DNA from: Camelus dromedarius
Taxonomy: Eukaryota
Assembly: GCF_036321535.1 (NCBI RefSeq)
Contig: NC_087447.1
Location: 12,896,001-12,960,000 of the forward strand
Reading direction: 5' to 3'
DNA length: 64,000 nt
Shown in pieces: positions 23,584 to 54,795 of this stretch. The position numbers were made by a program, and so were the translations under genes. Positions within the stretch are counted from its first letter, which is position 1. The number at the start of each line of letters is the position of its first letter. The notes beneath the pieces were generated by a model. It was not told the DNA's origin and ran no database searches. It saw only the letters and a list, made by a program, of their open reading frames with translations.

Positions 23584-23919
23584 TTAGGTTTTCTTAATCC
23601 ATTGTCTTAATTGCTGAGGTTACAGTGTTTTTTTAAACAACAGATTTAGTTAGTATCCCTTTCCCATTTATTTCACTTAAGAACAGAGTTAGAATGGAGG
23701 TTAAACTTAGCCAGATAAGGGGGGGTACACACACATGTACACACACACACACAAAGGGGAGAATAATAATTTGGCTGTGGGCTGTGTAGTCTTTTTGGAT
23801 AAGCTAAAACTTCAAATAAAGAAGCAATTACATAGCCAATTATTATCATTATTTTTTTTTACTTTGACAAAAAACTTCCAAGTAGCATGGAGGTCAGGAA
23901 CCAGTTTATGATTAAAGAG

Positions 23920-24100
23920 CCATGTGATCATATTTTATTTCCTTTTGAGACTAGAGTTTCTGCCTTTAGAGGATTGACTCCAGCATTAAAACCTATAACC
24001 TAGTCTCCATGGTGACCTGATCCTCCTTAAGGAGAAGCCAGATAAAAGGGCAGCAATCTGTATACACTCAAAAGTTGTCTCCAAATTGTACAGGTAATTC
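23920..24100 (+). promoter_or_regulatory. Candidate OR5F copy A promoter / non-coding first exon
   Basis: The block is conserved with 54615-54795. It contains O/E-like sites (tctccatggt, palindrome tccttaagga at 24024-24033) and ends in a shared donor-like cag|gtaatt at 24093/24094. The function is inferred only. Confidence 0.35.
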
Positions 24101-24915
24101 CAATCATCACTACATTGCATGTCATTTGAAAAATGAAAATGTTTTTCTTTCTGTTTGTAAGCTTCAGGACTTACTCAGGACTCTGATAAAAAAAGAAAAT
24201 AATGGACCAGACAAGGAAGACACTGGGAAGGAAGCTGTAAGTGTCTGGGGCTGTCATTCACAGCCGTGGGCAGGAGCAGTGCCTACTACTGCACGGCACT
24301 GATTTGACAGTGCAGTTTGTAATGAGAACAGCGGTTTGGTTCACTTTAAAAACACCACGAAAACATTCTTAAGACTATATAGATGTCAAAATATTGGTTA
24401 TTTGAAATGGGCTACTTTTACTGCTTGGAGAACAAAAGAGCAAATTCCGGGTGGCAATGCATGGATTTTAGAGTTGAAGAATACACAGAGTGGTCTTGAG
24501 GAGAAAAAAAAAATGCATTTGAGTCAAACTCGTACCTGTTCAGAGAATGGGAGAGACTTCAGCCTGGGCATTTCTATACTTTGCATTTTGGATGTGGGCC
24601 AGTAGAGAAAGAATAGCATATATACATTGCATTTTCAGAAGCTGAAATGGATCATGTGGACTTAGTGATTTGAGACTCTTACAGCTGAGATTCATTCAAT
24701 ACACTCAATTGTTTAATAAATTCCAGTGTTTTCATTTGTCCGTTAAGTTTCCTTTTATGATAGTCACTCTGTTTACTATGCTCTATTATCGCAGGGGTTT
24801 TATTTTTCCCATGTGTTACTAACTTCGGTAACATTTCTATTATTTCCTGGAAACTTTGGGAGTAGGGGGGGATACTGACAGGTAATACAAGTTTAGGCAC
24901 ACTATATCTGTAATA

Positions 24916-25860
24916 ATGGCCAGAAAAAATTACACTTTGCTGACTGAGTTCCTCCTGTTGGGATTAGCAGACACGCCAGAGCTACAGATTCTCCTCTTTC
25001 TGCTTTTTGCTGTGATTTACACACTTACAGTTCTGGGGAATGTTGGGATGATCTTATTAATCAGGATGGAGTCCCGACTTCACACTCCCATGTATTTCCT
25101 CCTGGCTCACCTGTCTTTTATGGACGTTTGTTATTCATCCACCATCACTCCAAAGATGCTGGCAGATTTATTGTCAGAGAAGAAAACCATCTCCTTTGCT
25201 GGCTGCTTCCTGCAGATGTACTTCTTCATAGCCTTTGCCACAACTGAATGCATCACTTTTGGGTTAATGGCCTATGACCGGTATGTGGCCATCTGCAACC
25301 CTCTGCGTTACTCCTTGATCATGTCCACCACAGTCTGCCTAAAAATGGCAGCTGGGTCTTTCACAGCAGGGCTGTTGAACTCCATGGTTCACACAGGTTA
25401 TGTAAGCAGCTTGCCATTCTGCGGGTCCAGGGTCATCCATCACTTCTTCTGTGACAACCCTCCAATTTTTAAGCTCTCGTGTTCTGACACTCACCTGTAT
25501 GAAGTCATTTTGTCCACATTTGCTGGTGTGAATATGGTCGGGACTCTGCTGGTGATCCTCGCCTCCTACGGCTGCATCCTCTTCTCCATCTTTCGGATGC
25601 ATTCCGGGGAGGGCAGGCGCAAAGCCTTCTCCACGTGTGCCTCTCACCTGACAGCCATCATTCTGTTCTGTTCCACCTCCACCTACACTTACCTGAGACC
25701 TAGTTCCAGCTACTCCCTGAGTCAAGACAAAGTGGCTTCCGTGTTCTACACGGTGGTCATCCCCATGTTGAACCCTCTGATCTACAGCCTCAGGAATAAG
25801 GAAGTGAAGAAGGCTCTATGGAATGCAGTTCCTAGGACAAGGATCCCTTCATGTCTGTGA
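24916..25860 (+). CDS. OR5F1: Olfactory receptor 5F1-like, copy A, 314 aa
   Basis: [20 protein letters not shown]...[26 protein letters not shown]...[17 protein letters not shown] matches recalled OR5F1, and all OR motifs are present. Which copy is the true OR5F1 orthologue cannot be decided here. Confidence 0.92.
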
Positions 25861-28800
25861 TTGTTGGGTTAATGTTCTGAACCCAATAGGATATTTAATA
25901 CATTTTCAAATGCTGGTACAAGCTTATGATTTTTCATCAGATTATTTTCTAAGTAATCACGTTCTATTAATACTCAAGTACATATTTCCAACTGGGTTTA
26001 AACTAACTTACCAAACTTATATAAAACTATGGAACTGTCTTCTAATCATTCTCTATTTCCATCAGGTTCTCAAAAATAGAACTTATCTGTAATGGAAACT
26101 TGGTTAAAGAAGAAAAGGATTAAGTATTTAGAGATAAAATCACAGCATCACATGGCTGGAGCCATACGAAGGATCTGTAATTGTCCATATATTTTTTCTC
26201 TATGCCTTCTTTTTCACCACTCACGATTTAAGAGATAGAGCTAGATCACCTATGTCTAGAATGTTTTAAAGTTAATATAGTTTTCCATTTTAATTTATTG
26301 ACTTGTTTCCTGGGGAGATATGTGAATCACATTTCAGGAACATACTTTTAATTGCAACTGTAAACACCATACCTTTTGTTTTCTTTATCTGCCCTTCCTA
26401 CCCATGTAAATTTATTAAATAATACGTGTGAATTTGTACAAACATAAGCTGTCAAGAAAACCGCTGTCTGGTTAGAATGCACCAATTACAATAGCCCTCC
26501 TTCCCCTCTCTTCTTTTCTTCTTGAAAATTCCCCATTCTTCTCTCACCTTATGTCGCCCAGACTCACACAGCCGCACAAAGCCACATGCACAGACATTCA
26601 GCTCCTGCAGAGTTGAATCAGTGCGTAGTTCCAAAGCAGATGGATCAATGTTTAATGGATGAATCTGACACATATTCTTCACAATAGACTCATGGATTTA
26701 CTGCTTACAGAAATCTTATCAATTGACAATAATAATCGATTAATATGTATCTTAATGTTAAAGCTAAGCATTAATGTGGAGGTAGATAGGGAGCTGGCTT
26801 AGTAGAACCCTGGAGGAAACTTGAGTGGGGACCAGGGCTTGCCAAGGAGACAGCGCACACTTAGTTTTTGGGAAGAACTGCCCCATGGTCCTTCCCTTGC
26901 ACTTGCTGCTCAAGTTGCACATGAAAGAAGCTGTGATGTTTGGGTCATCTGTGCTGTTGCAAAGCAGAGCTTCCTTATGACCTGTCACAAGAAGTCATCT
27001 AGCCCTATCATCCATTACCCTCAGTGTTCCATGTAGTTGACCCTGGGCAGAGGAATGGTCATGAAGTCATCCGTGTTACCTGTGTGCCCCTGGGCCATGC
27101 TCTCAGCCCACAGGTCCAGTTGGCTATCTGGCCCTGGAGACCCTGCGGCAGACTGATCAGGCTGTTCTCAGAGATGATTTACCTGCCTTCCCCCCCACCA
27201 GCAAGCGGGCTGCTCGTTGGCTGGACTCTTTCTGCTTTCCCTGTCCTGGGTATTTAGTGGAATCAAGTACAAAACCAAGATATTTCAGTAGTAAGTACTA
27301 ATATTCTATTCCTTCCATTGTGTGCTTTAACTTCTAGTAACACTTAGGAACAGAAACAATGTTTGGGAGATTAAATCCAATTATTCTGAGATTCGGGTTT
27401 TAGACAACCATTTTTTGAGCCCTGTTATCTGATCTCTAATTCTACTCTCGTACGTTTAATTACTCACATTTACAAAGCCTACAAATATTTCCAACTTTGT
27501 GAACTATATCACTTAATGAACTTGGTTAATTTCAATCCATTGTATATGTACTTATGTAATAGAGATTATTTAACCTATAATTGCTTATAAATGTATTTTT
27601 AAATAATCATATTTCCTTGCTTATTTTTCAAAGTGTTTATGTAAAAACATGTTCAAAATATTCTTTATTTCCTTTAAATCAAAAAATTTAAGTTGCAAAA
27701 GCATTGAGATTTCTAGTTGTTGTACTGACTTTGATTTTATCATTCTCTTCTTTCTTTAGAATCTGACAGTATTTATTACACCCTTCCTTATGAATGTCAT
27801 GTTCCTTTTGCCTCTTTGCTACCTGAATTGCTTTCTTTTTTCCTAATGTTCCTAGTCTTTTATTTCAGCTAAATGTTTAATGTTACCACCTTCCACAAAT
27901 ATACAGTTATCAGTCAACGCTTTGCCTAGTCAAGGTTTTTTGAACAGTTTATTTATTAAAACTAATTAAGGAAGTTTGAAATACCTGCCTTTATGCTCTG
28001 TTTTTGTCAATATCCATCAGCGATTTGGTGAGATCAGAGACTGACTTACAAAATCTGTGCATGTCAAAAAGTTGGAAAAGTAGCAAACAAGTTGGAAGAA
28101 TGAAAGAGTCAATATTCAAGAATCACAAGGATCCAAATCAACTACGAAAAATGGTATATTACTAATATATAGAGCTCTGCATTTAGGTCTAATGAGGAAA
28201 CAGTTTTATGTTAATGTATAAACATCTTTATTTAGTTAGTTAAATAGAAACTAACATGCACAAAAATAATTCTGTCTATTAAAGTGGGAAGTTTTACATT
28301 TTGTAAACAAAGTTAGGTAAAAGGTAGCTGTGAGATTAAGTGAGCAATAATACCATTTTACTTCACACTGCTCAAATAAATCAAACATAGTGTATTAACT
28401 CATAATTATGTCTCAGTGGACAGAGCTAAACAATATTATGTCAAGAAAGTAAAACCCAAACAGTCAGGTGTATGGGAAAAACTCAAATATAAAGTAGTTG
28501 ATTAAAGAATACACAATCTGTAGAAAAGGAACATACAGAGAACAAAATATATAGATTTATTGAAACACATAGGTTTATAGAAATAATTTCAAGATAGTTT
28601 TATAGAAAATGTATGAAATGTATCTCATAGAATGTATGGCTTCAGAAAGCAAAAATGTGGTCATTTGCTGCTAAACTTATATATAATTTACTGCTTTGGC
28701 TGAGAAATTGATATGAACTATCTTTTAGGATCCCTTTAAGTTCTGTGATTTTTCATCCTACTGTGAAAACTTTGCATATACCTATGTTTCATCCTTAAAT

Positions 28801-30104
28801 CTCAGAATGGTCTTTGGAATGTTTCAGTCACTTAATAAAAATTATTACCCCTACATGTGTTACTAAAGAGGGAGGTGATGAACCTTGGCCACAGAATTCC
28901 AAGGTTTTGCAACAGGAGGTCACACTGTTGAAGATCTACATCAAACTCCAACTTTCAGAATTCGGTTCCAAGTCCTCAACCTCTTGAAATTGCATGATCA
29001 TTTTAACCTTGTGCTGTAAAACAAATAAACTTATAAAATATAATTCATGAGCCATGTTTGTGTTGAGTGTGTGTCTGATTCATTAACACACTAGTAAGAG
29101 AAAACAGCATGATGAAAAGAACATACATGCTTGGAGAGAGTACGGAAGCACAAAGTTTACTAAGCTGCAAAACAGAATAAGCATCACTGAAAACATGTGC
29201 AGTACAAGCTGAGGTTTTATTTTACATGTCATAGACTATGGTGCCCAAATCACATGTTACAGAGGAGGGCTTGGTGAGAGTTAGTCAAAAGGAAGAAACA
29301 AAACATTTAAAGAGCAAATGCTGAAGACATTTCTATGGCTGTGAGTAGTGACATAACTTTATCCTCCAATCGTAGAGCCCAACAGACAACTAACTTAGGC
29401 TCATAGAACAGTGCTACCAGAGTCAGAAGCAGAGTGACAAGAAGCAAGTTTTAATTTTAAATTGGTCCATTGCCAGTGATTTTTTCCCCAAAGTAAAACT
29501 ACTACTGTGTTGTTTTCCTATTTCTTAATTTTAACCTTTTCCTTGAAAAATGCATACTTATTACATTTTCCCCAATGAGAAGGCCAATAACTTCAAATGA
29601 AACTCATATGAAGTAACTATTTACTGTTGTTCTGTTCAAAGAAGCATGGTAAATTTGATGTGAGGAATAAAATCAAACATGGGATTTTAAAGACACTGGC
29701 CTGCAGGAGAGAGCCTTATTACTAATGTGTGAGTCACTGAGATCAGATTTTGTACCACAGATTGTTTCCTGCACACATCTCTCAGACATCTTGGGGTCTG
29801 TCCCTTCTCAATTTCACTTTCTTTTATTTAAAGTGTAGTTCGTGATTCCCTTCTCTTCATCTTCTTTGTCAATGACAGCATTGCCCCTGTCAGGGATCTT
29901 TATGGGCTGACTAAACCCACCCCTTGTTGGATGCAGATTGAGTTTTGACATTGCACAGATGGATCTGCAAAGAGAGAAACAGCCCACCACCAGCAAGGGT
30001 GTGCTGCATGACGCTGCTTATTTTGAGAGCTGTAACTTACAAGCTGTGCAGTAATTTACATCCAACTACATTGGGCTTAATTCTGCATTAAGCAATGTAA
30101 AACA

Positions 30105-31298
30105 CCATTACAGCTAAGAAATTTCAAGCAAGAAGAGCAAATCTGGAGGCATCACACTTCTTGATTTTGATCTATATTGCAAAGCTGCAATGATTGATAC
30201 AGTATGGTACTCACATACACATCAGCATATAGACAAATGGAACTGATTCGAGAGCCCAGAAATAAACATACACACATGCCATCAACTAATATTTGACAAG
30301 GGAGCCAAGAACACTCAATGGGGAAAGGACAGCTTTTTAATAAATAGGACTGGGAAAATTGTATATCCACATACAAAAGAATGAAATCAGACACCGATCT
30401 TACAGCATACACAAAAATCAACTTAAATTAATTAAGTACACTGCCTGAAACCATTAAACACTTAGAAGTAATTATAAGGGGAGAATTTCTTGGCACTGGT
30501 CTTGGCAATGATTTATTGGATCTGAACCAAAAATACAAGCAAAAAAGCACAAGTAAACAACTGCAACTGCATCAAAGTAAAAATCTTCTGCACAACAAAG
30601 GAAAAAATCAAAAAAATTAAAAGGCTACCTATAAATGGGAAATATATATTCTCAAACCATAAATCCTATAAGTAGCTAATATCCAAAGTATGTCATAAAA
30701 CTCAATAGCAAAAAAATAAATTAAAAAAGATTAAAATTTGGCAAGACTTGAATAGACATTTTTTCCAAAGAAAGCAAACTAAGTGTCCATCAACATATGA
30801 ATGGATAAAAATAAATGGTAAAATATACACACATATATATAATGGAATATTATTCAGCTATAAAAGACAATGAAATTTTGCCATTTGCAATGACATAGAT
30901 GGACCTGGGGCAGATATTATACTTAATGAAATAAATCAGCCAGAGAAAGAGAAACGTTATGTGTTTTGTTTTACATCTGAAATCTAAAAATTCAAACAAA
31001 TGAACAAATACAACAAAACAGAAATAGACTCAGAGATACAGAGAACAAATGAGTGGTTACAAGATGGGGAAAGGGGTGTGGAGTGGGGCAAGCTAGGGGT
31101 ATGGGATTAAGAGGATCAAACTAATAGTTACAAAATTTCAAAAGTGACAAAGATGTAATGTACAGCACTGGGAATGTAGTCAATATTTTATAAAAACTTT
31201 GTATGGAGTGTAATCTATAAAAGTATCAAATTATTATGTTGTATACATAAAATTAATATAAAATTATAAATCTACTATATTTAAAATTAACAAAAAAG
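30105..31298 (+). mobile_element. L1 3' fragment, present in unit A but not seen in unit B
   Basis: ctggaggcatcacacttcttgatttt...gacaagggagccaagaacactcaatgg...ggaatattattcagctataaaa is L1 ORF2 and 3' UTR with internal deletions. The duplication offset drops by about 1 kb across it. Confidence 0.9.
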
Positions 31299-33049
31299 AA
31301 TATATTTGGGCACAATCTCTACTGAAATCCTGTGACCACAACCACATGCTAGCTGGTCTCCCTACTTTCAAGCTCTCTGCCTTGCATTTAAGTGTATCGT
31401 GTTCTTATTTCATACCATCTTTCAGACATTTTATTCATTATCAGCAGTAGAAGATAACGCAGTAGATAAGGCTACTGATTTGGAAAGATTCAATGACACA
31501 GGTGTAATCTCCTGAGTCCCTAAAAAGCCCCAAAGTGTTCTACATAGATGGCGCCATGCTTGGAGCCGAATATGCATCAGTAAATAAGACAAACGCACTA
31601 GAGTCAAGTAATTTATGACGAGAGAGAAAGTCAGATTACGGAATATATTGTAAAACATGACATAATGAAAGTCAAGCTAGAAGTTAAATACAAGAGCGTT
31701 ATAGCAAAAAAAAAAAAAAAAAAAGCCACATTGACTTTGCTGGCAGGATAATGGGTTATGGGCTCCTTCTCATAGAATGTGACTTACCAGCCCCAGCTAA
31801 GAGGTGAACAGGTGCTTGGCAGTCACGCATTGTGACCGATTCATAGGATACAAAGTTTTCTGTGCTCCCTGAAGAGCACGTCACAGCACTTGATGTGGCC
31901 AGATTTACTGAATATTTCAGTAAATAAATTGAGAAAGACTGAATGCATTAATTAATTACATAGCTCACCAAAGATTCATAGCAACAATAAAAATTTGCAC
32001 TATATTCTCTAATTAGCTTTAACGCCCGGATGTCACTTTTCCATCCTGACCTACTTGATATAGAAAACTTCAAACTTAGTGTACTGTCTCGTCTTGTTCA
32101 AATTCATTTTCTTCTTATGTATGTACCTATAACTAAAGGTAAATTCTAGACATGGTGTGAACAGAGGACTTTAACTCATAAACAAGCTAGAGGAAGCAGG
32201 AACACCAGACAGATAATTTTCAAGTTACATTCTTTGAGGTTAAAGATAGTATTTTAATCATTTCAAATGCAGTAGCCATTGTTGGCATATGTAGTTATGC
32301 ATCAACTTTAAGACTGTGAGTGTCGTGTGCAGCCCTTCCCAGTAAGGGAATTGCTCTGGTCTCCAGAGGTGGAGAGGATGGGGAGACTGGTGAAGAGGAG
32401 TGGCCAGGGGGCCAGCGCTCCTCAGACCATATTCCACAGAGGGAGAAACTTCAGTGCAGCACTAACCCAGCCAGGGACAGCCGTGGCTATTTTCTGAGTT
32501 CCCACTTGATAGACAGTTTGTTGAGTTTAAAAGTACAGCATGTCAGGGAGAGATGATGTCTCTACAATGAATATGGGGTATTTTCTACGTAAGGTGCACT
32601 GATTCATTTAAGTTAAGTATGGGTGTCAAGGAAAAATAAGAATGACTGAATATGTCACTTGAATAATTTAAACCAGACATTTACATTATAAAATATATTA
32701 TATATATTTTCTGTCAAAGAGCAGCACATAGTGATTTCTCCATAAAAGAAAAAGGTAAGCAGTTATAATTTTACCCCAGTTATTTTATTATAGTGTGTTA
32801 ACTCAAAAATCAAAAGACATAAAAATGACTTTCTTCTAATATGATTCTTTTATGAGATACATCTTCTGAACTTGAAATATACAAACTATAACTATAAGTA
32901 ATCAGTCATTCACTTTTATAACAGTAAATAAAATATTCAATGGGCATGAAATCAACTTGCTGTTGTGAAAAGTTTTATAATACTTGGTTTTATTTCTATT
33001 ATTCAGAACATTAAGTTCAAAATAATAATTCCAATTAAATGTTCTATGA

Positions 33050-33285
33050 AGCCCGCTGAGTTTTGATTAAGAACATGGACGCTGGCATTACACTGCTGAG
33101 TCTGAAGTCACCAAAGTCACATACTAGCTTCTTGACACTGGGCAGATTACTTAACCTCTCTATGCCTCTGGTTCTTTATGAAAATGTGAATAATAACAGT
33201 ACCTACTTCATTCGGAATGCAATGAATGTGATCATATGGGTAAAATCATTAACACAGGTAGCACATAATATGTTTAAACATTGTT
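33050..33285 (+). mobile_element. MIR SINE remnant
   Basis: gattaagaacatggacgctgg...ctgggcagattacttaacctctctatgcctc...aataataacagtacctacttca matches MIR. Confidence 0.8.
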
Positions 33286-33878
33286 AACAATAAAAAAGCA
33301 GTTTCAAATAATCAGAACTCTTTTATTCTCCGTAGCTACGCTAGTTTCTGCTAAAAAAGAGAAATTGCAAAAGGAGGAACTTAAGTTCTCATGTTGGAAC
33401 CGCGAAAGTCCCATTACTTGTTAATGGTGGAAGTAGAGCAACCAGAAACGAAAATAATCTGAAAAGGTCATCTCCGGGGAAGCTGTCAGACATTAAACAG
33501 GCTTTCGTTTCACTTGCATTTCTATCATAGAGTCTATTTGTCTTATGTGTTCAAAGTACAACTATAAGAGACTGGCACAGATGAGACAGAAAAAAAAGAA
33601 AATTGAAAACTAAAAGCCCAGTAACTTAAAGCGTTTCCCCCCTAGATTTTGCTGCTGGTTGAGACCCACCAGCATAAAGAGGTCTCCTAAATTTAACTCA
33701 GCATTCTGACCAAATGCTACCCTCTACGTTCTTCCCTCTCCTAGATTAAGAAAAGGCTACTTCAGAACAGGATAAAAGACAGCAAAGTTCCAAAAGAGAA
33801 AAAAAAAAGATATCTGTTAAAACACTATCAGTAGGATAATGATCATAATGAGAACGCCTTATAGAGCTACAAGATCTG

Positions 33879-34364
33879 TTTTTTTTTTCTTTTTTAAATT
33901 TATTTTTTAAATTGAAGTATAGTCAGTTTACAATGTTGTGTCAATTTCTGGAATACAGCATAATGTTTCACTCATACATATACATACATATATTTGTTTT
34001 CATATTCTTTGTCATTATAGGTTACTGCAAGATACTGAATATAGTTCCTTGTGCTATATAGAAGAAACTTCTTGTTTATCTATTTTATATGTAGTAGCTA
34101 GTATCTGCAAATCTCAGACCCCAATTCATCTCTTCCCACCCCCTTTCCCCACCACCGTAACCATTTTCTATGTCTGTGAGTCTGTTTCTTTTCTGTAAAT
34201 AAGTTCATGAGTGTCTTTTTTTTTTTTTTTGATTCCACATATGAGTGATTTCATATGGCAATTTTCTTTCTCTTTCTGGTTTTCTTCACTTAGAATGACA
34301 ATCTCCAGGTCCATCCATGACGCTGTAAATGGCGAGATTTTACTCTTACTTTATGGCTCAGTAG
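33879..34364 (-). mobile_element. Relatively young L1 3' end, antisense
   Basis: Poly-T is followed by aattgaagtatagtcagtttacaatgttgtg...ttcacttagaatgacaatctccaggtccatccat. Confidence 0.9.
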
Positions 34365-36947
34365 TGCTGACTGGATAAAGAAGTTGGGGTGTATTTATAC
34401 AACCACCTATTTTAAATCAAGCAGTTAACATAGATGGTGCTACTTCTCAAAACAGCTCCCTGCGTTACATCTTGTTACTGCATATATTTTCAAATAAGCA
34501 AAATTAAGCTCTGATAATTTAAATAAGGACATATCTAGTTTTCATTTTAAGTCACTCAGTGTCAAGATTTTTGGTCAGTGAGTACTTGAATCAAGTTAAA
34601 TGGAACATAATTGTTGAGATTAGTGGAAAATCTACCTTGATGAAGTGACCTGTCAGGAAATACTCATAAGCCATGCCCCCATGTAAGCACCTGGCTAGTC
34701 TTTGGTATATAAAACTGAGTAAGTATATGAGGGTATTTTTTTTTCCTAGAAAACGTTGTATTATCTTTTCTAAAAAGAAGTAAAAATAACAGAGTAATTC
34801 TGTGGTACCCTTAGATTAATTACCACTTCCTTGAGTAATTATCTGCCACTCCGATAGCACTTTATGGTTCTCTCTGCATAGACGCTGCACATTCTAGGCT
34901 ACGACCTGACTCACCTGTCTGAAGTCATCACCCGTCACCACTTATCTCTGAGCTCTGTAATCATGGAAACCGACTCATTTATTTATCATTAATGTCCATA
35001 GTATTTAGTACACTTTTTATTTAACACACATGTAGTATTTATCCATCATAAACTACAAAATATATGATAGAATATACATTGATTTACTGCCTGATATGTG
35101 CATTCAAACTTCTGTCACTGAACATTGAATTCCCCTTTTCTCCAGTTGGTTTTCATAAGATGTAAGTTCTGAAGAAAAATAAAGCATATACACATATATA
35201 GATATAGATATACACATAGCATCTTAAAATTGAGAAGATATAAAATGCAAAGGTAACTACCAAAATGTGAAAAGAAGAGGAAAAAAAAGAGAGAGAGAAG
35301 AGACCAAAATACACAAGGATCTCTAGAGATCACCAGAGAAGACTTAGAGGCGCACACCACGTCTGTGTTGGAGCCACGTATTATTTGAACCCAAACGTCT
35401 CAGGTCCTTGGTCCCTTCTCTTGACATTTCTGAGCTGCAAGCGGGGGTGGGTCAGGAGGGAGTTTTTGCCTTTAGCGTGTGCTGTGAAAATTTAGACAGT
35501 GAATTAAAGAGAATTCACTGAAAGAAGAAGGGAGGAGTTTGAGATCAGTGAGAGCTAGGAAACTTAAAGTAGAAATTAAGTGTTTCAGCTGTTTCGTTTT
35601 TGTGAGAAGGAAGGGGAACTGGGGGGGCTTCAAAGAAGAGAGGGGAGTTGTATTCTGCAGGACGTGAAGGATGTGGGAAATGAAGGACAAAGTAGGACAT
35701 TTATGACAATGTGGGTTTAGGAATACGTGGCAATCTGTTAAAAAGGTCATAGTTTACCGTTAATGGCTGGATGGAAATCACAGTAAGTGATGTCTAGGAA
35801 CCAGTATGGTGGAAGAAAGACTAAACTTGTTTGGTCCAAAAATGCTTAATTATTGAAGGAACTGATGTGATTAAGGCTACACTGCATTTAACACTGCGCT
35901 TTCGGATAGTTATTCACATACAGATGTTTAGAATATATATATCACACATTCACAATGTATTATATATGCCTAATATAACATATACTCAGAAATTCATGTT
36001 TAAAGGTAAAAAACCTATGGAAATGTAAGTCTTACATTTTATCTGGTGTCAGTTGTGTGAACTCTGAGATCACATTCTCTTACACACTTTTATTTCCCTT
36101 TTTCTTATTTAATTACCCCGTAAAGTCTGTAAACTCATTTAAATACTCCTAAAGTCCTAAAATGTGATAAATAAATGTATAGCTTCTTAAGATTATTGAG
36201 GGCCATGGTAGGGGTGAGAAATATTATGATAATTCTTATTCAAATTATTTCCTATTCGAAATTTCTAAATATATGACTTGCTTAGGTGTTTTATTTCTAA
36301 TGTAAATTTCTATATATGCTACATGGAACATTTTTCTATGATGGAGGCAGGGAAGCCCTTTTTATTTTTCTGATCGGTGTCTAAGTCTCTTCCACACAGT
36401 GAGTGGTCCAGGTTGTCCTGAGCTTGGCCTGGCAGCTGAATCTTACTGACCACCCTGCCCTTTGGTTCCCTGAGATGCAGCTTCCAGGGGAGACGTCAAA
36501 TCAAGGGTGAAAGGATCACATAGAGATGATAAATTAGAAGGTGCTAAGCAGAAAAAAATACAAATAAAAAGCAAATAGAGACTGAATTTATCAGGAATGA
36601 GAAACATTGAGAACGTCTTGTTACCCAGATTAGTTCTCATCCTCACAGTAAGCTACCTCCCGTGTTTTGCTCTTATTTTACTGTTGTTTGTTCTGCTGTG
36701 TTCATTTAAACATCCATCACCTTTAATATGAGCAGAATAAATAGAGCTTAAGATTACATTCTGCTTTTATGGTGTGGAATTTTAGAGAATTGGGTTTCAA
36801 ATATATTACCAAAAATACAAAACAAATAAATGAAAAAAATGTGGATATCTATCTTATCTCAATGGATTGGAAATCATTGATTTATTATGTCCCATTTTGC
36901 TGCTGGGCGCAGCAAGTTGAAGTGACTTCTAAATCTTTTATGCATAG

Positions 36948-37904
36948 ATGGGATCCAGAGGACAAAGTCCCCCACAGCGGAACCACACGACACTGGTGGA
37001 GTTCACCCTGCTGGGCTTCTCTGATGTTCCCGACCTCCAAGGATTTCTTTTTGGGCTGTTTTTGATCATCTACCTGATTATTCTGATGGGAAATAGCCTC
37101 ATTATCGTCATAATCAAGATTGACCCTTCCCTTCAGACCCCCATGTATTTTTTCCTTGGGAACTTCTCCTCCTTGGAAATATGCTATGTATCAGTCATTG
37201 TCCCCAGATTATTAGTAGATCTCTGTAAGCAAAATAGAAGTATATCCTTCCTGGCCTGTGCTACCCAAATGTATTTCTTTCTGGTGTTTGGAGCCACGGA
37301 GTGCTTTATTCTGACTGCGATGGCTTATGACAGGTACGTTGCCATCTGCCACCCGTTACTCTACCCCTTGGTCATGAACAGCAGGCTGTGTGTGCGACTG
37401 GCAGCTGGCTGCTGGGTGAGCGGGATCCCTGTTCACGTAGGGTTTACCTCCCAGGTCTTCTCTCTGCCCTTCTGCGCGTCTAACCAGCTGAACCACTTCT
37501 TCTGTGACATACCTCCAGTGCTCAAGCTTGCCTGTGGGGACACGTTTACGACTGAGATGCTGGTTTATGTGGTTGCCATTCTAGTGGTCACTGTTCCGTT
37601 CATGCTGATTCTTGGATCTTACGTGAACATAATCTCCACCATCCTGAGGCTGCCTTCAGCAACTGGGCGAGCCAAGGCCTTTTCTACCTGTTCTTCCCAC
37701 CTCATGGTTGTGGCTTTATTCTTCGGTTCAGGCATCATTACGTACATGAGACCAAAGTCCAGTCATTCCATAGGAATGGACAAATTTCTCTCTCTCTTTT
37801 ACACCATCGTCACCCCAATGTTCAACCCCATAATATATTGTCTGAGAAACAAAGAAGTTATGGTGGCACTGAGAAAACTCCTACTGAAATGGTCTGTGCT
37901 ATGA
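36948..37904 (+). CDS. Olfactory receptor, family 10 (OR10AG/AK/AF group), 318 aa, intact
   Basis: Motifs include [50 protein letters not shown] and PMFNPIIYCLRNKEV. GFSD and ACATQMYFF are typical of OR10. A candidate splice acceptor (tcttttatgcatAG) lies directly before the ATG. Confidence 0.93.
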   Translation: MGSRGQSPPQRNHTTLVEFTLLGFSDVPDLQGFLFGLFLIIYLIILMGNSLIIVIIKIDPSLQTPMYFFLGNFSSLEICYVSVIVPRLLVDLCKQNRSISFLACATQMYFFLVFGATECFILTAMAYDRYVAICHPLLYPLVMNSRLCVRLAAGCWVSGIPVHVGFTSQVFSLPFCASNQLNHFFCDIPPVLKLACGDTFTTEMLVYVVAILVVTVPFMLILGSYVNIISTILRLPSATGRAKAFSTCSSHLMVVALFFGSGIITYMRPKSSHSIGMDKFLSLFYTIVTPMFNPIIYCLRNKEVMVALRKLLLKWSVL

Positions 37905-39344
37905 CTCAAAAACATAACTTCATACATTTTTTCTTCTTATTTATCAAAGACTCCACACACCAATTCCAGAGGCCATGTTTCAGCAACCCTATCACTCTTC
38001 TTCTCTGGAGTCTAAGTAAACACCGTAAGGAAAGCAACGTTTTGCTGATATTTTCAGTGCTTCACCTCAGTCCTCAAAAAACATCTACTGCATAGTAAAG
38101 TTTCAAAAATTATTTTTTAAATATATAACAACATGACTAAAACTGGATTTAGAGAGAGAAAAATGTTTATGTCAAAATAAAGGTAAAGACTTAAACCATA
38201 GTTTTCCCCTTATTTCTTGGGGGTGGTGGTTATTTAATAGATATGCTTTAACAATTGAACAGAAAGATTCATAAATTTCATAAAATCTATGTCTTGTTAT
38301 TGAAAAAGCACTTATCTTTTACACATCTTTATGTGTATAAATATGTAATATATAATATCTGACTTTATTGGTAAGAAAAAAATGAAATAAGATGAAAATA
38401 ATGCATGTATATGAAGTCCTATATAACGCAAGCACACAATTATTACCACTAATGGCATTAATGACAATAAGAGTTCATTTTTAATTAAACCCATCTAAAA
38501 AAATAAAGAAGGAAAACATGTAGTAGATGAAAACTTGGAAAGTATAACTGTATCCAAATGAGACAGATGAGAAATAGCCAAGCTTGTTCTAAAGAAACAG
38601 CATATGAATAATGAATCTGGGATATCAAAAGGAAATTAAGCAATATGTTCCTGAAGTAACTCCAGATTCAGGACATAGAGTGCAGCATTCCTGTCCAAAA
38701 AGAATTAATCAGTGAGTGTTGGATGGACACATAATATAATCACACATAACTAAGATCTGGAAGAACAGAGCCTAACATGATTCTCTGAATATATTTTCAA
38801 TGAAAAAATTCATTAAGAAGAGAAAAAGATTTCATGTGTTGCAAATTAATTTCCTAAAAGTATCAGCACTCCAACCCTGTTTCCTGTAAAAGTCTACAAC
38901 TTGATCCAAGAAGGAAATGTGAGTGAATAATAGAGAGCTCCTCACAGGTGTCTGTGTTGCTACTTCTTGTAGACCAGTAGGGAGCTCACTAGCAGTTACG
39001 TTATTTCTCCAAAATGTTAGTTCCAATGAAAAACATTACAATGCTTGTTTCCAGCTGCCATTTCTACATCAATGACAATGTTTCCTATTTATCCGATCAT
39101 GGATTCATTACTTGATATTTTATCAAGATAATGGTTATCAAGTAACAACAGAAGAAAATATTTTGTAGTTTGCTTAAATTCTAGCTTAACTTCTCTATAT
39201 TTTTTTTCTGAAAAGATAAACTGATTAAAATTATCTTGTGCCATAAATCAATTCACTTAGCACAAATTCAATCTTATATTAGTACTTACCTATGGTGCTC
39301 CAGTGGGCAAAAAGAATAACATATCAAAAATCCCTGGACAAAAT

Positions 39345-39345
39345 C

Positions 39346-39370
<25 letters not shown>
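39345..39370. repeat. (CA)n microsatellite
   Basis: Direct reading. Confidence 0.95.
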
Positions 39371-39376
<6 letters not shown>

Positions 39377-39834
39377 TGCACAAACACAATATTACATGAC
39401 AAAGAATGTTCAGATGATAAGTGTTGTTATTTTGGACAGAGATCATCAGGCTGTTAAAATACTTGATATAGGCTTCAACAAGCAGGGGGGGTCTGCATGG
39501 TTATACTTAAAGTGGACAGTAGGAAATATTTTAGACTTTTGTGATAATGTTACACAGGTACTTATAGACCAATGTGAATTATAATCTTTTAAAATTATAA
39601 CTGCTGTAAAACAATTCATAGTTGGCTGAGGCTCCATCAAAAAAAAAAAGAAAAAAGGAAAAAACACCTAGCAGGCAAACAAATGGGAAAAGCAATATGA
39701 ACAGTAGTCTGTATTTTGTATCCTCAAAAAGGTAAATAGTCCACGTAGGTGAGGTAATAGAGATAACGACAAAAATGAAGTAACTAAGTAATGACTGAGA
39801 AATACATTAGCCATGAATGTATAGACATGTGAAA

Positions 39835-42060
39835 TGGTGAAATGGACAACATTCTTCCCATGAATATGCTGGCTCTATGCCTGAGACAATGTCCTGGTCA
39901 AAGTGCAGATAACTGGAAACAAAGAAGAGCACAGATGTATCGCTGGGCTGAAGAGGCAGTGATCAGCATTCGAGACAACCAGGAGCCCAGGATCTGTCAC
40001 AGGGCACGGAGGTTGAGGGACTAGATGGTGCTGGGGACAGACAGACCTGAATCAAGTGTTCCTGGGAGGCTCTGGAAGACAATGGGATATGGATGGGCTG
40101 GAGGAGGCTACAGAAGGCTTTCAGGAAAGTGACTGCCGTGTATTTGGGGGAGAAATGGAGATACTAGGAATAAAGCTTAGCTTAGAGACACTGGAGTTGC
40201 ATCCCAGCCAGAACTTTTAACACCTGAATGTATTTCAAGCAGCATTTAAGATACAGAACTGCTAGCGCTTTGGAGTAAGACCTGTTCCCCAAAGTCAGGT
40301 CTTTAGTCATCTTAAGATTCACTGTAGAAAAGTCCAAACCTAAGTCTCAACAACACTTATACAGAAGATAGATACAGATGTAAAATTTCCCAAGTTTTTA
40401 GATCTGGGAAATGTCTTGGTCTTTTGACAACTTTGCGCTAACAAAATATAAGACCTAGACATTACAAATACAAGTGATCATCCAATAATGATAGCTTGAT
40501 AGGGAAAAAAAAAACTATAACAATCTTCATAGGAATTTATGAAAATCTAGATTCTCTACAGTGTATCATAGACAATTTAAAATATACAGTAAAAATTACA
40601 GGATATGAAAAACTCAGGAAAACTAAATAGACAAGACAAAATGAATCAACTGAAAATGACTGCAAAATGTCTCAGGTGATGTTTATTGGCGACTTCTAAC
40701 CATCCCTTATAAACATGGCCAAGGACTCGAGAGAGGGTATGACCAAATTTGCAGAAAATTGAGTAAACTGATAATTCCCACAGATCATTAAAATTTTGAA
40801 AAGAACCCCATTAAAATTCTAGGGTGAGAGTTAAAATGAAAGGAAGTGGAATTTAAGGGAAATATAAGTGAAATGAATACTTGATGTAATTAGATTGATA
40901 GCATTTGGACATGTCCAGTGAAATACCAGTGCATTTGAATTTAAATTGTTGGAAACATTACAATCCTAAAATTATTTGTTTAATAATTTAAAAAATACCA
41001 TCTCCTCAAGAACAAGTAGAGTGATATCAAATTGTCTAAAATTTGCATAACTGAAGGCCAACTGCAAGAAAATGATAATGATGGCAGAGAATTTTTCAGA
41101 TTTGTTGGAAAACATCAGTATACATATCTCAGTGAACCTCATGGGAATTAATCAGAAGAAAATCCTGTATATTCATCTATATTCATTATAGTGAGTCAAC
41201 TGTTTAAAGCTAAAATAATGGCATAGTAAGTTCGGGGTTATAATATAGACATGAGCAAAATATGTGATATCAGTAACACAATAAAATTTGAAAAACATCA
41301 AATTATACTGTTATAAGATTATGACATTTTTGGAGTGAGATGTGAAGTGGGTGATGTGAGACATGAAGGATGAAGGGGGACATGGAAAGTGGAAGCGTCT
41401 GTCGTAAAGGATGGGGATTAAAATGGAACAATTTTAACTGTATGTCATCTCTGATAAGTTAAGGATGCACATTTTAATGATTAGCCCTGAGGCAATCCCT
41501 GAAATGATAATAAAAATGTGGTGTATATATCAAAAGGCAGATCTAGACATAAAATAACTTGATTAACCGCCAAATTAGCAGAAGAAAACAGGGCAGCCAA
41601 ATGAAAGAAAAAATGGAAACAAATAGAAAATGGTAGTATATCATAATTACATTAAAGGTGCATGGACTAAGCAGTCCAAGCACAAGATAAATATGAAGAA
41701 AAAAAGGCAGAAACCAACTATATGCTGCCAAATTGAGCAGTGCTTTAAATACATAGACATATATAGACAAGATGGGGTTGAAAGTAAAAGAAGTGAAAGA
41801 GCTGTATGTTTTACACGTAGTAGGTTGTCAATAAATGTTTTTTTGAAGAAGAAAAAAAATGAAAGAAAAAAGACTAAGAAAAAATATATACAGTAAATTA
41901 TAAGGAGCTGGTCCTGAAATTATGTGTAGAGTATAAAGCATGTATCTATCAAAAATAAAATTAGAAGCAAAGAGAACTGTGAAAGGAAACTTGAAAGCGG
42001 GAATATACATATAAGTAGCAGTAATGATACAGGAAAATAAATGTGGAGTGAGGATGACCA
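39835..42060 (+). mobile_element. Old L1M 5'/ORF1/inter-ORF remnant (duplicated at 62240-64000)
   Basis: The L1M inter-ORF motif gataagttaaggatgcac...ccctgaggcaatcc and the ORF2 start-like ccaactatatgctgcc are both present. Confidence 0.6.
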
Positions 42061-42656
42061 TGTCCCAGGTCTCTGTTGAGTCCCTGGGATGTGCCCTGCC
42101 CAGTGTGGGTCCTTGACTCCGCACGGGAAAGAATTCAAGAGTGAATCACAGTTGAGTAAAGGTAGATTTATTTAGAGAGAGACATACTCAATAGAGTGTA
42201 GGCTGTTTCAGAAGGCAAGAGAAAGGCCATAACGTGTGAGGGTTGGGTGCTCAGTAGATATGCACTCCATAGACAGAGTGCAGTCTGTCTCCCTCAGAAG
42301 GGAGAGTGCCATAAGGTTTGTTAGTTCTTATGGACTCAGTAGCTTCTTATGCTAACAAGTGGGAGGATTATTCCAATTACTTTTGGGGAAGGGGCTGGGA
42401 TTCCAGGAACTGAGCCACTGCTCACTTTTAGACCTTCAATGGTTAGCCTTAGAACTGTCATGGTGCCTGTAGGCATATCATTTAGCATGCTAATATATTA
42501 CAATGAGCGTATAATGAAGCTCAAGGTCTACTAGAAGTCAAATCTCTCGCCATCTTGAGCCTCAAGGCACTGGGAGTTGAATCTTCCACCATTTTGGTGT
42601 TAATTGCTGAGTCATTCCTTGAATGGCTGTGCCCTGCCCCCTTCCTTCCTGTCTCA
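42061..42656 (-). mobile_element. ERV1-type solo LTR (MER41-like layout), antisense
   Basis: It has TG...CA termini (tgtcccagg ... cctgtctca). The motifs gggtccttgactccgcacgggaaagaattcaagagtga...tttattt and tctctcgccatcttg are typical of antisense ERV1 LTRs. No clear TSD was found. Confidence 0.75.
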
Positions 42657-43894
42657 GTATGGGACTGGAGATGTTAGACTCATGCTTGAAGTGTTCTCCC
42701 CATGAAATGCACAGAAGAGGGTTGAAACTGAGAAATGTTAAATTACTAAATGTTGCAATGAGAAAGAGGAGTTTTTAGTTAGAAAAAAGTTTTATTGATA
42801 ATAGTTGTTCTTAATTCTTGTTTACAGGGTTTATTAATAAGATGAGTGAGTCTATTCAGGGATTCACATAGTGTCTGAGAAAATCATAATTTGAATAAAG
42901 TAATCTTAGTTTCTATAATACAGAATTGCCTTTGTGTTCACAAATTTTAACCAACAAATGTCTGCCTCTTAAAATTATTACCCCTTAAAGGTAAGTAAAC
43001 AAGTAAAACATGGCCAGATGATGTTAACACAGCATGATTTGCTGTAAGTTCTATTCAGAGGAATTATAGAAAATAAAATAACACAAGTAAGAAATCAATT
43101 GATAAAGAATATGAACAGTTTCCTGCAGGTAATATTGAACCATTAAGAGTGCTTGTTCTTCTAGGACATCCATGTCTTCTGACAGTATTTAATAAATGGA
43201 GAGTGCATGAAATTGTATTCTGTGGAGAGCCTGCAGGGAAGTCTGGCCTACCATGAAAGATTTGTTTGCAGAGACACCAAATTAATTGCAAACAAGAGCG
43301 TTTAACTAGCAATTTAGATGTAAAGAGGGAAAAGGGGCATTCCCTGGGGGAGGAAGGGACTATTTCCTCTGTAAGGAGCCTTGCTCTTTAAAAGCAAGTT
43401 ACGTTCTTGTTTAAACATCTATGGATTGTAAACAATGTAACATTTTAAAATATAGACATTTATCAATGAGAAGGAAGCAACTTCAGCAAAACTGAAAAAG
43501 GTAAATATGTTGATATGCTATTTTAATTCAAGATAATGTTACCAATTTCATGATCAAGAGTCAATAAATAATATCAAACAACTAAAACCATGAGTGTATG
43601 TGGGTAGAAATGATATTTATTATTTAGGATAGCATTATGTAAGGTAGGCTTCTGACTTTCTGAAGTTAAAAGTTAAATTATGTGCGTGAAGCATTTGAAG
43701 TATACAAATTTCTAATTTGTCTCTTAACTATATAATATTGTAAAATCTATTCATTTTAAGAAATAATCTATTAAGAAAACTATAGTCAAAAAGTGATAAT
43801 TTCATTCAAATTAATTAAACATATTTTGCTATACTGTTAATAAAGTAAATGTTGCCATTATAGGTAAAATAATTTCTATGACAAGGAATCACCT

Positions 43895-44532
43895 TGTTAG
43901 AGCAGGTAGATAGCTAGATATGATTAGAGAAAGGGGATGCAGACCAAATTTCAGGAATTAGGCAAAAAGGGCGTGGGCCAAATACAAGAAACCATACATC
44001 ATGTAAACAACAGGGGTGCCTGGGCAGACAAAGAAAAGCGGGAACCTCTGGGTTAATAAGCAGTCACACATTTTGGGGTGACACGTGTCCTGGAGGCTGA
44101 CAAAGAAAGGTGGGAAAAGGCAGGAATCTCCAGTGTCCCCATGTAACCTTTTGCTCATTATGTCCTCGTTTCAATAAAATTAGCCTTGCAGTTTAGAAGT
44201 ACCCATCACGCACCAACACCATGACACTTCCAAACCAGACTAAATAAGGACAAAAATTTCTCCTTCCTGTAGGAAAGTGGAGTTGGGATGAAAATCAGGG
44301 ACTACAACCACAAGTCCTTCCCTCCCCGATGAATATTCTGCCCATTCATTTTTACACTCAATGTAACCAACTTGCCAAAGAAACTAAGGCAGCTGCCCAC
44401 CTGAACCTGCCCGCTCTCCCCTTGAGAATGTACTATCCAGCCCCTAATAAATCCTCTGTTTTCTTTCTTAACCGCCACGTCCTGTCTCTGAATTCTTCCT
44501 GCAAGGAGACAAGAACCTAATTACCTGCAACA
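43895..44532 (+). mobile_element. ERV1-type solo LTR, 638 bp
   Basis: It begins tgttag and ends caaca. AATAAA at about 44446 is followed by a U5-like tgtctctgaattcttcctg...gacaagaacc. The near-TSD is acct/actt. Confidence 0.8.
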
Positions 44533-54614: not shown

Positions 54615-54795
54615 CATGGGATCATGTGTTATTTCCTTTTGAGACTGTAGTTTCTGCCTTCAGAGGATTGACTCCATAATTAAAACCGATTTTCTAGTCC
54701 CCATGGTTACCTGGTCCTCTTTAAGGAAAACAAAATGAAAGGGCAGCAACATGTACATACTCAGAAGATGTCTCACATTTTTACAAAGAGGTAAT
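54615..54795 (+). promoter_or_regulatory. Candidate OR5F copy B promoter / non-coding first exon
   Basis: Homologous to 23920-24100. It has TAATTA at 54677-54682, an O/E-like tccccatggt at 54698-54707 and a donor-like gag|gtaatg at 54790/54791. The function is inferred only. Confidence 0.35.

What the first reader, a model, noticed from the sequence alone, without database searches (positions are those of the whole stretch)
24888..25890. Gene conversion tract that almost exactly matches the OR5F coding sequence
Copy A (24916-25860) and copy B (55671-56615) differ at 13 of 945 nt (98.6% identical), with perfect runs up to about 280 nt. Near-identity starts at caagtttaggcac (24888/55643), 28 nt before the ATG, and ends about 30 nt after A's stop. 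Outside the tract, identity falls abruptly to roughly 70-80%. An old duplication with a nearly identical CDS implies recent non-allelic conversion across 30.7 kb and two other OR genes. The 5' edge sits at a possible acceptor (tttAG|gcac), so a cDNA-mediated event is a speculative alternative. Because the assembly has gaps, consensus mixing between the copies must be excluded.
Basis: partly seen in the sequence, partly recalled or inferred. Interest (0 to 1): 0.75.

Follow-up and report, generated by a model that had tools for sequence, protein, structure and literature searches.

The report
Camel OR5F1 twins homogenised by conversion
Two neighbouring camel smell-receptor genes from a very old duplication have had only their protein-coding 1 kb repeatedly copied onto each other, which makes this a clean, cross-species-verified example of an already well-known process (gene conversion between gene copies).

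Summary
The two OR5F1 reading frames (24916-25860 and 55671-56627) differ at 13 of 945 nt. The near-identical tract runs 24888-25889, with 15 mismatches in 1002 nt. The aligned flanks show 26% mismatch (log10 P = -106).

The same pattern, with the same edges, occurs in three other assemblies: Camelus ferus, C. bactrianus and alpaca. Twelve locus-specific differences are fixed across all three Camelus genomes, so consensus mixing in the assembly is very unlikely.

- Flanks group by locus: 538 locus-type informative sites, 0 species-type and 1 cross-type (window versus alpaca).
- Between 24905 and 25889 there are 0 locus-type, 15 species-type and 3 cross-type sites.
- dS between the copies is 0.03, against about 0.30 in the flanks.

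The best reading is recurrent interlocus gene conversion confined to the coding exon. It acted in the Camelus stem and separately in the alpaca lineage, and mostly predates the dromedary/Bactrian split, so it is not very recent. The cDNA idea is not supported: the tract stops 29 nt or less after the stop codon, there is no poly(A) trace, and the candidate acceptor is weak.

Conversion of whole OR coding regions is already described, and this scan has noted similar cases in this genome. I rate this a new member of a known kind, of modest interest.

The parts
24888..25889 (+). Near-identical tract at the upstream locus. The part showing exchange after the camel-alpaca split lies within 24905-25889.
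   Evidence: 15 mismatches in 1002 nt against 26% outside, and the ML changepoints; 0 locus-type, 15 species-type and 3 cross-type sites between the edge markers 24904 and 25890.
55643..56644 (+). The same tract at the downstream locus, offset +30755.
24916..25860 (+). Upstream OR5F1 gene, intact single-exon ORF of 314 aa with a TGA stop.
   Evidence: Pfam 7tm_4 at E = 5.5e-52. 99% identical to proteins named olfactory receptor 5F1 in Camelus.
55671..56627 (+). Downstream OR5F1 gene, intact ORF of 318 aa. It reads CGA where the upstream copy has TGA, which adds 4 codons.
   Evidence: It differs from the upstream protein at N181S, I184L, C252Y and C313R, plus the 4-aa tail.
23601..43895 (+). 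Unit 1 of the old tandem segmental duplication, at 72-79% identity outside the tract. The segment 32137-39838, which holds OR gene 36948-37904, has no counterpart in unit 2.
   Evidence: Self-BLAST. The match was followed beyond the window in C. bactrianus locus L006.
54276..64000 (+). Unit 2 of the old duplication. It runs off the end of the window.
25457..25467 (+). Patch that escaped homogenisation: five fixed differences within 11 nt (codons 181-184). The upstream copy keeps the hippo-like letters. The downstream copy shares derived letters with the alpaca copies.
   Evidence: None of the four other ORs in the window is a donor.
25852..25867 (+). 3'-terminal sites whose two haplotypes (stop/314 aa versus read-on/318 aa) sit at opposite loci in Camelus compared with alpaca.
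   Evidence: The cross-type sites are 25858 and 25867.

Best explanation
The two genes are tandem paralogues of olfactory receptor OR5F1, 30.76 kb apart and in the same orientation. The segmental duplication holding them is old: its flanks differ by about 0.30 substitutions per site, roughly the camel-hippo distance.

Recurrent interlocus (non-allelic) gene conversion has repeatedly overwritten one copy with the other, but only across the roughly 985-1000 nt that make up the coding exon.

Inferred mechanism: a break in one copy is repaired from the paralogue on the same chromosome or on the sister chromatid. Purifying selection keeps the coding sequences similar enough for strand invasion. The flanks were already about 25% diverged and block heteroduplex extension. 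The tract therefore ends at the same places each time and the homogenised island sustains itself.

Shown: at least one near-full-length event in the Camelus stem after the split from alpaca, separate events in the alpaca lineage, and possible small events after the dromedary/Bactrian split.

Inferred: the repair mechanism, the reason for the boundaries, and any benefit of keeping two near-identical receptors.
For: - Tract statistics: 1.5% versus 26.1% mismatch, log10 P = -105.6, with a 280-nt perfect run against a shuffled maximum of 59.
- Synonymous sites are homogenised. dS between the copies is 0.027-0.037 in the three Camelus genomes and 0.057 in alpaca. Camel-alpaca dS is 0.068-0.078 and the flank distance between paralogues is about 0.30.
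- Trees: both flanks split the camelids into an upstream clade and a downstream clade (100/100 each). The coding sequences put all camelid copies together (100/100) and the six Camelus copies together (78/100).
- Site patterns for window plus alpaca: flanks 538 locus / 0 species / 1 cross; interior 0 / 15 / 3.
- Fourteen of the 15 species-type sites are shared by all six Camelus sequences. Eight are derived in Camelus and two in alpaca, spread over 24952-25831, and five are synonymous.
- The identity profile has the same edges in C. ferus, C. bactrianus and alpaca.
- The spacing between the loci is conserved at 30,755-30,784 bp in all four camelid assemblies (coordinates), so there is no crossover product.
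- The stretch holding copy A with its flanks has 94-98% of its sampled 31-mers present in 20 runs from 9 studies.
- Conversion of entire OR coding regions is described in the literature (PMC1995454, citing Sharon et al. 1999).
Against:
- The direction of conversion (donor versus acceptor) cannot be read, since every available outgroup pair is itself partly homogenised.
- Relative to hippo the flank signal is mixed. The 3' flank favours grouping by locus (40 versus 20 and 16). The 5' flank leans towards grouping by species (33 versus 17 and 12). The age of the duplication relative to the camel-hippo split is therefore unresolved.
- The swapped 3'-terminal haplotypes are not explained by simple one-way conversion.
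Confidence: 0.92

Rival explanations
1. Assembly artefact: reads from two diverged copies were mixed or collapsed, so one consensus coding sequence was written at both loci.
For: The window's assembly has gaps. The read-laying test could not be run. An older C. bactrianus protein version carries the upstream-type Cys252 at the downstream locus, which could reflect mixing in a short-read assembly.
Against: - Three other assemblies, from C. ferus, C. bactrianus and alpaca, show the same structure and the same edges.
- The same 12 positions distinguish upstream from downstream in all three Camelus genomes.
- The nearest gap is 1.65 kb upstream of the tract, and the 40.7 kb holding both copies has no N.
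- Twenty runs from 9 studies hold 94-98% of the sampled words of copy A plus its flanks.
Confidence: 0.02
2. cDNA-templated conversion: a spliced OR5F1 transcript was reverse-transcribed and used as the repair template. This would explain why the 5' edge sits at an AG|G.
For: Near-identity starts 9 nt upstream of an AG at 24895-24896. The tract nearly coincides with the coding exon.
Against: - The tract ends 29 nt or less after the stop codon, whereas mouse OR 3'UTRs have medians of about 0.8-1.6 kb (PMC6624953).
- There is no A-run or other retro-copy trace at the 3' edge.
- Identity includes 9 nt upstream of the supposed exon start.
- The AG has only about 8-10 pyrimidines in the preceding 20 nt.
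- Site 24904, inside the supposed exon, has stayed locus-specific since before the camel-alpaca split.
- The short 5' motif is also partly conserved in both hippo copies.
- The same limits recur in two lineages, which homology-limited DNA-DNA conversion explains without any RNA step.
Confidence: 0.03
3. No exchange at all: purifying selection alone, or a recent duplication of the gene, explains the similarity.
For: Both ORFs are intact and encode typical ORs. Coding sequence normally diverges more slowly than flanks, as in hippo, where the coding sequences are 90.9% identical against about 75% in the flanks.
Against: - Synonymous divergence of 0.03 is about ten times below flank divergence.
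- Substitutions specific to Camelus or to alpaca are present at both loci, which selection cannot produce.
- The flanks of each locus are orthologous between camel and alpaca (100/100), so the duplication long predates that split.
Confidence: 0.01

Closest known systems
Conversion of whole coding regions between paralogous OR genes (primate chromosome-17 OR cluster, Sharon et al. 1999 Genomics 61:24, as summarised in PMC1995454; mouse MOR28 cluster, Nagawa et al. 2002 Gene 292:73)
   Same: Tandem OR paralogues whose coding regions are far more alike than their non-coding surroundings. This is attributed to interlocus gene conversion that homogenises the receptor sequence. The content of Nagawa 2002 is from my own recollection; only its reference was seen.
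   Different: - The genes (OR5F1 pair) and the lineage (camelids) are different.
- Here the flanks are about 25-30% diverged.
- The tract limits are shown to recur independently in Camelus and alpaca.
- A 5-site patch and the C-terminal haplotypes escaped or were exchanged crosswise.
Concerted evolution of duplicated genes with a conversion domain shrinking onto the selected region (e.g. globin gene pairs; the theory of Teshima and Innan)
   Same: An old duplication with periodic homogenisation. The boundaries fall where flank divergence stops heteroduplex formation, giving a mosaic of converted and escaped patches. This comparison rests on my own knowledge.
   Different: This is a single-exon chemoreceptor gene. 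There is no evidence here on the selective benefit.
Other conversion-homogenised gene pairs noted by this scan in the same genome (TAAR8/TAAR7 palindrome, OR10D pair, OR10K1/K2, B2M, TUBA3)
   Same: The same signature: gene bodies near-identical inside old, diverged duplications. These are unchecked AI notes.
   Different: Those cases are palindromic or cover only part of a gene. This one is a direct repeat 30.8 kb apart with two other OR genes in between.

Membership tests
Olfactory receptor, OR5F1 subfamily (class II OR, Pfam 7tm_4) | Match to the OR-specific 7-TM profile above the curated cut-off | tested here: met
   PF13853 7tm_4 scores 177.7 and 183.5 bits against a cut-off of 27 for the two proteins.
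Olfactory receptor, OR5F1 subfamily (class II OR, Pfam 7tm_4) | Intact intronless ORF of about 310-320 aa with the [13 protein letters not shown], KAFSTCxSHL and PMLNPxIYSLRN motifs | tested here: met
   The ORFs are 314 and 318 aa, and all three motifs are visible in the translations.
Olfactory receptor, OR5F1 subfamily (class II OR, Pfam 7tm_4) | Closest named relatives are OR5F1 | tested here: met
   The closest hits of matching length (about 310-330 aa), at 81-99% identity, are named olfactory receptor 5F1 or 5F1-like across mammals; interspersed ~500-aa hits at 50-57% identity carry other OR names. The exact sequences sit in clusters named OR5F1 in Camelus.
Olfactory receptor, OR5F1 subfamily (class II OR, Pfam 7tm_4) | Expression in olfactory neurons and response to odorants | not testable with these tools
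   No RNA data were examined.
Interlocus (non-allelic) gene conversion / concerted evolution | Within the tract, paralogues within a lineage are closer to each other than orthologues between lineages | tested here: met
   Coding sequence identity is 98.2-98.7% within Camelus against 95.2-96.6% for camel versus alpaca. The tree groups by lineage. The interior has 15 species-type and 0 locus-type sites.
Interlocus (non-allelic) gene conversion / concerted evolution | Flanks keep the orthology of each locus, so the duplication is older than the speciation | tested here: met
   In both the 5' and the 3' flank tree, the camelid upstream and downstream clades are each supported 100/100. The flanks have 538 locus-type and 0 species-type sites.
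Interlocus (non-allelic) gene conversion / concerted evolution | Synonymous sites are homogenised, so the similarity is not due to selection alone | tested here: met
   dS is 0.027-0.037 between the copies, against about 0.30 in the flanks and 0.07 for camel-alpaca. Five species-type sites are synonymous.
Interlocus (non-allelic) gene conversion / concerted evolution | A discrete tract with statistically significant boundaries | tested here: met
   The two-changepoint model gives 2*dlnL = 421.6. The run-length permutation test agrees.
Interlocus (non-allelic) gene conversion / concerted evolution | No change in copy number or spacing, meaning non-crossover exchange | tested here: met
   There are two loci 30,755-30,784 bp apart in the window, C. 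ferus, C. bactrianus and alpaca (coordinates).
Interlocus (non-allelic) gene conversion / concerted evolution | Donor and acceptor identified, or the event observed directly | not testable with these tools
   All outgroup pairs are themselves partly homogenised. The protein tree gives no clean orthology between upstream-type and downstream-type copies.
cDNA-templated (retro) conversion | The tract covers the transcript through the 3'UTR and may leave a poly(A) trace | tested here: not met
   The tract ends 29 nt or less after the stop codon, and no A-run follows. Typical OR 3'UTR lengths come from PMC6624953.
cDNA-templated (retro) conversion | The 5' edge falls exactly at the exon boundary | tested here: inconclusive
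   The edge is 9 nt upstream of an AG with a weak pyrimidine tract. A locus-specific site at 24904 lies inside the putative exon. There are no transcript data.
Assembly consensus-mixing artefact | The pattern is absent from independent assemblies or data | tested here: not met
   The pattern is present in three other assemblies, with 12 shared locus-specific differences.

The most novel reading that the evidence does not exclude
The exchange may not be purely one-way. The two C-terminal haplotypes (stop/314 aa versus read-on/318 aa, sites 25858 and 25867) sit at opposite loci in Camelus compared with alpaca and hippo. The 5-site patch at codons 181-184 also survived every homogenisation. This would fit either reciprocal exchange, or a long-lived polymorphism shared between the loci and kept by selection so that one short-tailed and one long-tailed receptor variant always coexist. 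In that reading conversion acts as a shuffling device rather than only a homogeniser.
Probability: 0.15. Interest if true: 0.45.

Novelty: new member of a known kind. Interest (0 to 1): 0.3.

Why it matters
The case gives a well-controlled natural example of how far ectopic conversion can reach between direct repeats: 30.8 kb apart, across two other genes. It also shows how flank divergence pins the tract to the coding exon, because the same limits were reused independently in two camelid lineages over more than 10 million years.

There is a practical consequence. OR5F1 copies cannot be assigned orthology from coding sequence alone; the flanks must be used. Birth-and-death counts of OR genes that rest on coding-sequence trees will misdate such pairs as recent, lineage-specific duplications. 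The protein tree shows species-wise pairing of OR5F1 copies in many mammalian orders, which may have the same cause.

The finding does not change current understanding of the mechanism.

Tried and rejected
- Read-level test. I tried to lay Logan contigs from four independent runs on 24300-26500. The remaining work was local computation on data already fetched, plus word-only look-ups.
- Donor for the 5-site patch (25457-25467). The other four ORs in the window are only 54-61% identical to the OR5F1 pair, and none carries the derived letters as a block.
- Dating the duplication against hippo. The 3' flank tree groups by locus (100/99). The site patterns are mixed, with the 5' flank leaning towards species and the 3' flank towards locus. 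I do not claim that the duplication predates the camel-hippo split.
- Finding the donor locus from a 48-protein OR5F1 tree. There are no clean upstream-type and downstream-type clades. Only hippo-downstream falls outside the rest of the cetartiodactyl copies (95/85), which is too weak to use.
- GC-biased direction of the differences. The downstream copy has G or C at 10 of the 13 sites, but polarisation with alpaca and hippo is ambiguous at most of them. I make no claim.
- Literature on camel OR gene conversion. I found nothing specific.
Full report
**Observation**

The window holds six intact olfactory-receptor ORFs. Two of them are 24916-25860 (314 aa) and 55671-56627 (318 aa), both on the + strand and 30,755 bp apart. 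They differ at 13 of the 945 aligned nucleotides.

I made a global alignment of 23601-29200 against 54276-59940. Identity is 62-88% per 100 nt on both sides and 94-100% across the gene. The jump up is at 24888/55643 and the drop is after 25889/56644.

The statistics are as follows.
- Inside the tract there are 15 mismatches in 1002 columns. Outside there are 1161 in 4446 (26.1%). The binomial tail is log10 P = -105.6.
- A two-changepoint likelihood fit returns 24888-25889. Its 2-lnL support is 24888-24905 for the start and 25849-25893 for the end.
- The longest perfect run is 280 nt, against a maximum of 59 in 2000 shuffles.

The only N runs are 17991-18164 and 23034-23233. The two copies and the whole interval between them are therefore gap-free.

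**What the genes are**

Both proteins match Pfam 7tm_4 (olfactory receptor) far above the cut-off. They are 98-99% identical to proteins named olfactory receptor 5F1 from Camelus bactrianus, C. ferus and C. dromedarius, 92% identical to alpaca OR5F1, and 81-87% identical to OR5F1 and OR5F1-like proteins across mammals. The window is therefore a Camelus OR cluster.

The two proteins differ at N181S, I184L, C252Y and C313R. The downstream copy also has a 4-residue extension, because it reads CGA where the upstream copy has a TGA stop.

**The old duplication**

The self-comparison shows that 23601-32136 and 39839-41589 match 54276-61868 and 62242-63998 at 73-77%. Following the downstream unit in the C. 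bactrianus locus L006 extends the match to window 43895, at 72-79%.

So the two OR5F1 genes lie in a tandem segmental duplication of at least 20 kb. The 1-kb tract is its only near-identical part. A 7.7-kb segment carrying the OR gene at 36948 is present only in unit 1.

**Independent assemblies**

I fetched both loci with 10-kb flanks from four assemblies:
- C. ferus, GCA_009834535.1
- C. bactrianus, GCA_048773025.1
- alpaca, GCA_048564905.1
- hippopotamus, GCA_030028045.1

The identity profile of upstream against downstream is the same in all four camelid assemblies. Flanks are about 75%. The coding sequences are 98.2-98.7% identical in Camelus and 96.7% in alpaca, with the same edges. Hippo shows 90.9% in the coding sequence over similar flanks.

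Twelve positions in the tract distinguish upstream from downstream identically in all three Camelus genomes. Spacing is conserved at 30,755-30,784 bp in camelids (coordinates). Twenty sequencing runs from 9 studies hold 94-98% of the sampled 31-mers of 24300-26500.

Consensus mixing in this one assembly cannot produce all this.

Maximum-likelihood trees:
- In both the 5' flank (-1300..-30) and the 3' flank (+1000..+2500), the four camelid upstream sequences form one clade and the four downstream sequences another. Each clade has 100/100 support and stem branches of 0.12-0.15.
- In the coding sequence, all eight camelid copies form one clade (100/100) and the six Camelus copies group together (78/100).

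Informative-site patterns for window plus alpaca are clearer still.

| Region | Locus-type | Species-type | Cross-type |
|---|---|---|---|
| Flanks | 538 | 0 | 1 |
| Interior, 24905-25889 | 0 | 15 | 3 |

The last locus-type site on the 5' side is 24904 and the first on the 3' side is 25890.

Of the 15 species-type sites:
- 14 are shared by all six Camelus sequences;
- 8 are derived in Camelus, 2 in alpaca, and 5 could not be polarised;
- 5 are synonymous;
- they span 24952-25831.

A substitution that is specific to one lineage yet present at both loci needs transfer between the loci after the lineages split. Conversion therefore covered nearly the whole exon in the Camelus stem, and it also acted in the alpaca lineage. 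The first 300 nt of the two alpaca copies are identical.

**Timing**

| Comparison | dS (NG86) |
|---|---|
| Copy versus copy, Camelus | 0.027-0.037 |
| Dromedary-type versus Bactrian-type orthologues | 0.016-0.023 |
| Camel versus alpaca | 0.068-0.078 |
| Hippo paralogues | 0.235 |
| Camel versus hippo | 0.28-0.33 |

The fixed differences between the copies are shared by all Camelus species. The last full homogenisation therefore predates the Camelus crown split and postdates the split from alpaca. By my own rough calibration (crown about 4-8 Myr, Camelini-Lamini about 16-25 Myr, from memory) this is on the order of 5-10 Myr ago, so "recent" holds only in a relative sense.

There are hints of smaller, later events, though they could also be shared polymorphism. 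Sites 25518 and 25578 show species-type patterns between dromedary-type and Bactrian-type genomes. At 25328-25329 the window's upstream copy carries the downstream letters, while C. ferus and C. bactrianus do not.

The duplication itself is far older than the camel-alpaca split: flank distance is 0.30 against 0.045. Whether it predates the camel-hippo split is unresolved. The 3' flank says yes (tree 100/99; sites 40 versus 20 and 16). The 5' flank leans the other way (33 species-type versus 17 locus-type and 12 cross-type).

**Why the tract equals the exon**

This part is inference. Homologous repair needs long, nearly perfect identity, and mismatch repair aborts heteroduplex in diverged DNA. 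By the time of the camel-alpaca split the flanks were already about 25% diverged. Selection and earlier conversion had kept the exon similar. Every new event is therefore confined to the same island, which explains the identical limits in two lineages without any special signal at the edges.

**The cDNA idea**

The motif at 24888-24896 ends in an AG, but several points count against a cDNA template.
- Only about 8-10 of the 20 nt before the AG are pyrimidines.
- Identity begins 9 nt upstream of the would-be exon start.
- Site 24904, inside the would-be exon, has stayed locus-specific since before the camel-alpaca split.
- The short motif is also partly conserved in both hippo copies.
- At the 3' end the tract stops 29 nt or less after the stop codon, with no A-run. 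Mouse OR 3'UTRs have medians of 0.8-1.6 kb (PMC6624953).

A cDNA template is not needed and is poorly supported.

**Unexplained details**

1. Five fixed differences lie within 11 nt (25457-25467). The upstream Camelus copy keeps the hippo-like letters. The downstream copy and both alpaca copies carry derived ones. No OR in the window is a donor. This patch has escaped homogenisation in Camelus.
2. The two 3'-terminal haplotypes have swapped loci. The stop/314-aa form is upstream in Camelus but downstream in alpaca and hippo. The read-on/318-aa form is the reverse. One of the two sites is a CpG transition, but the other is a transversion, so parallel mutation is unlikely. Possible explanations are reciprocal exchange, or sorting of a polymorphism shared between the loci. 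Neither can be tested here.

**Comparison with what is known**

Homogenisation of entire OR coding regions by gene conversion is described. The review PMC1995454 cites Sharon et al. 1999. The mouse MOR28-cluster paper by Nagawa et al. 2002 was seen here only as a reference.

I found no paper on camelid OR5F1. This scan's own notes list several similar conversion-homogenised pairs in the same genome: TAAR8/7, OR10D, OR10K, B2M and TUBA3 (unchecked notes). This is therefore a new, well-verified member of a known kind.

A 48-protein tree shows OR5F1 copies pairing by species or order in elephant, sloth, tree shrew and flying fox, and across all cetartiodactyls. This could reflect the same process elsewhere, but I did not test it with flanks.

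**Verdict**

- The gene-conversion reading is supported, with about 0.92 confidence, and is better described as recurrent and exon-limited than as a single recent event.
- The cDNA reading is not supported.
- An assembly artefact is very unlikely.
- Interest is modest, at 0.3.

Noticed in passing
window 25852-25867 and 56607-56622: The stop-codon state (314 versus 318 aa) and a linked G/T site sit at opposite loci in Camelus compared with alpaca and hippo. The C-terminal haplotypes have swapped loci in one lineage.
   Followed up: partly
window 25457-25467 and 56212-56222: Five fixed differences lie within 11 nt (codons 181-184). They have escaped homogenisation in Camelus. The upstream copy is ancestral-like, and no donor is present in the window.
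   Followed up: partly
window 32137-39838: A 7.7-kb segment carrying the intact OR gene 36948-37904 has no counterpart in the second duplication unit, where only about 370 bp lie between the matching blocks. It is either an insertion in unit 1 or a deletion in unit 2.
   Followed up: no
window 36948-37904 and 45516-46451: These two further intact ORs are 68-70% identical over the coding sequence only, with unalignable flanks. They are an older pair with no sign of recent conversion.
   Followed up: no
window 4873-5114 / 33880-34122, 33896-34003 / 48743-48847, 18236-18719 / 23234-23574 / 30772-31270: Dispersed repeat copies at 69-89% identity, some inverted. Two families abut the two N gaps, which suggests the gaps sit in interspersed repeats.
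   Followed up: no
proteins P0127 versus P0126 (C. bactrianus downstream locus): An older annotation version has the upstream-type Cys252 at the downstream locus. This is either a polymorphism shared between the loci or mixing in a short-read assembly.
   Followed up: no
48-protein tree: OR5F1 and OR5F1-like paralogues cluster by species or order in elephant, sloth, tree shrew and flying fox, and across all 29 cetartiodactyl copies. Concerted evolution or repeated duplication may be general for this subfamily.
   Followed up: partly
These places were not sent to any search tool afterwards.
   Followed up: no
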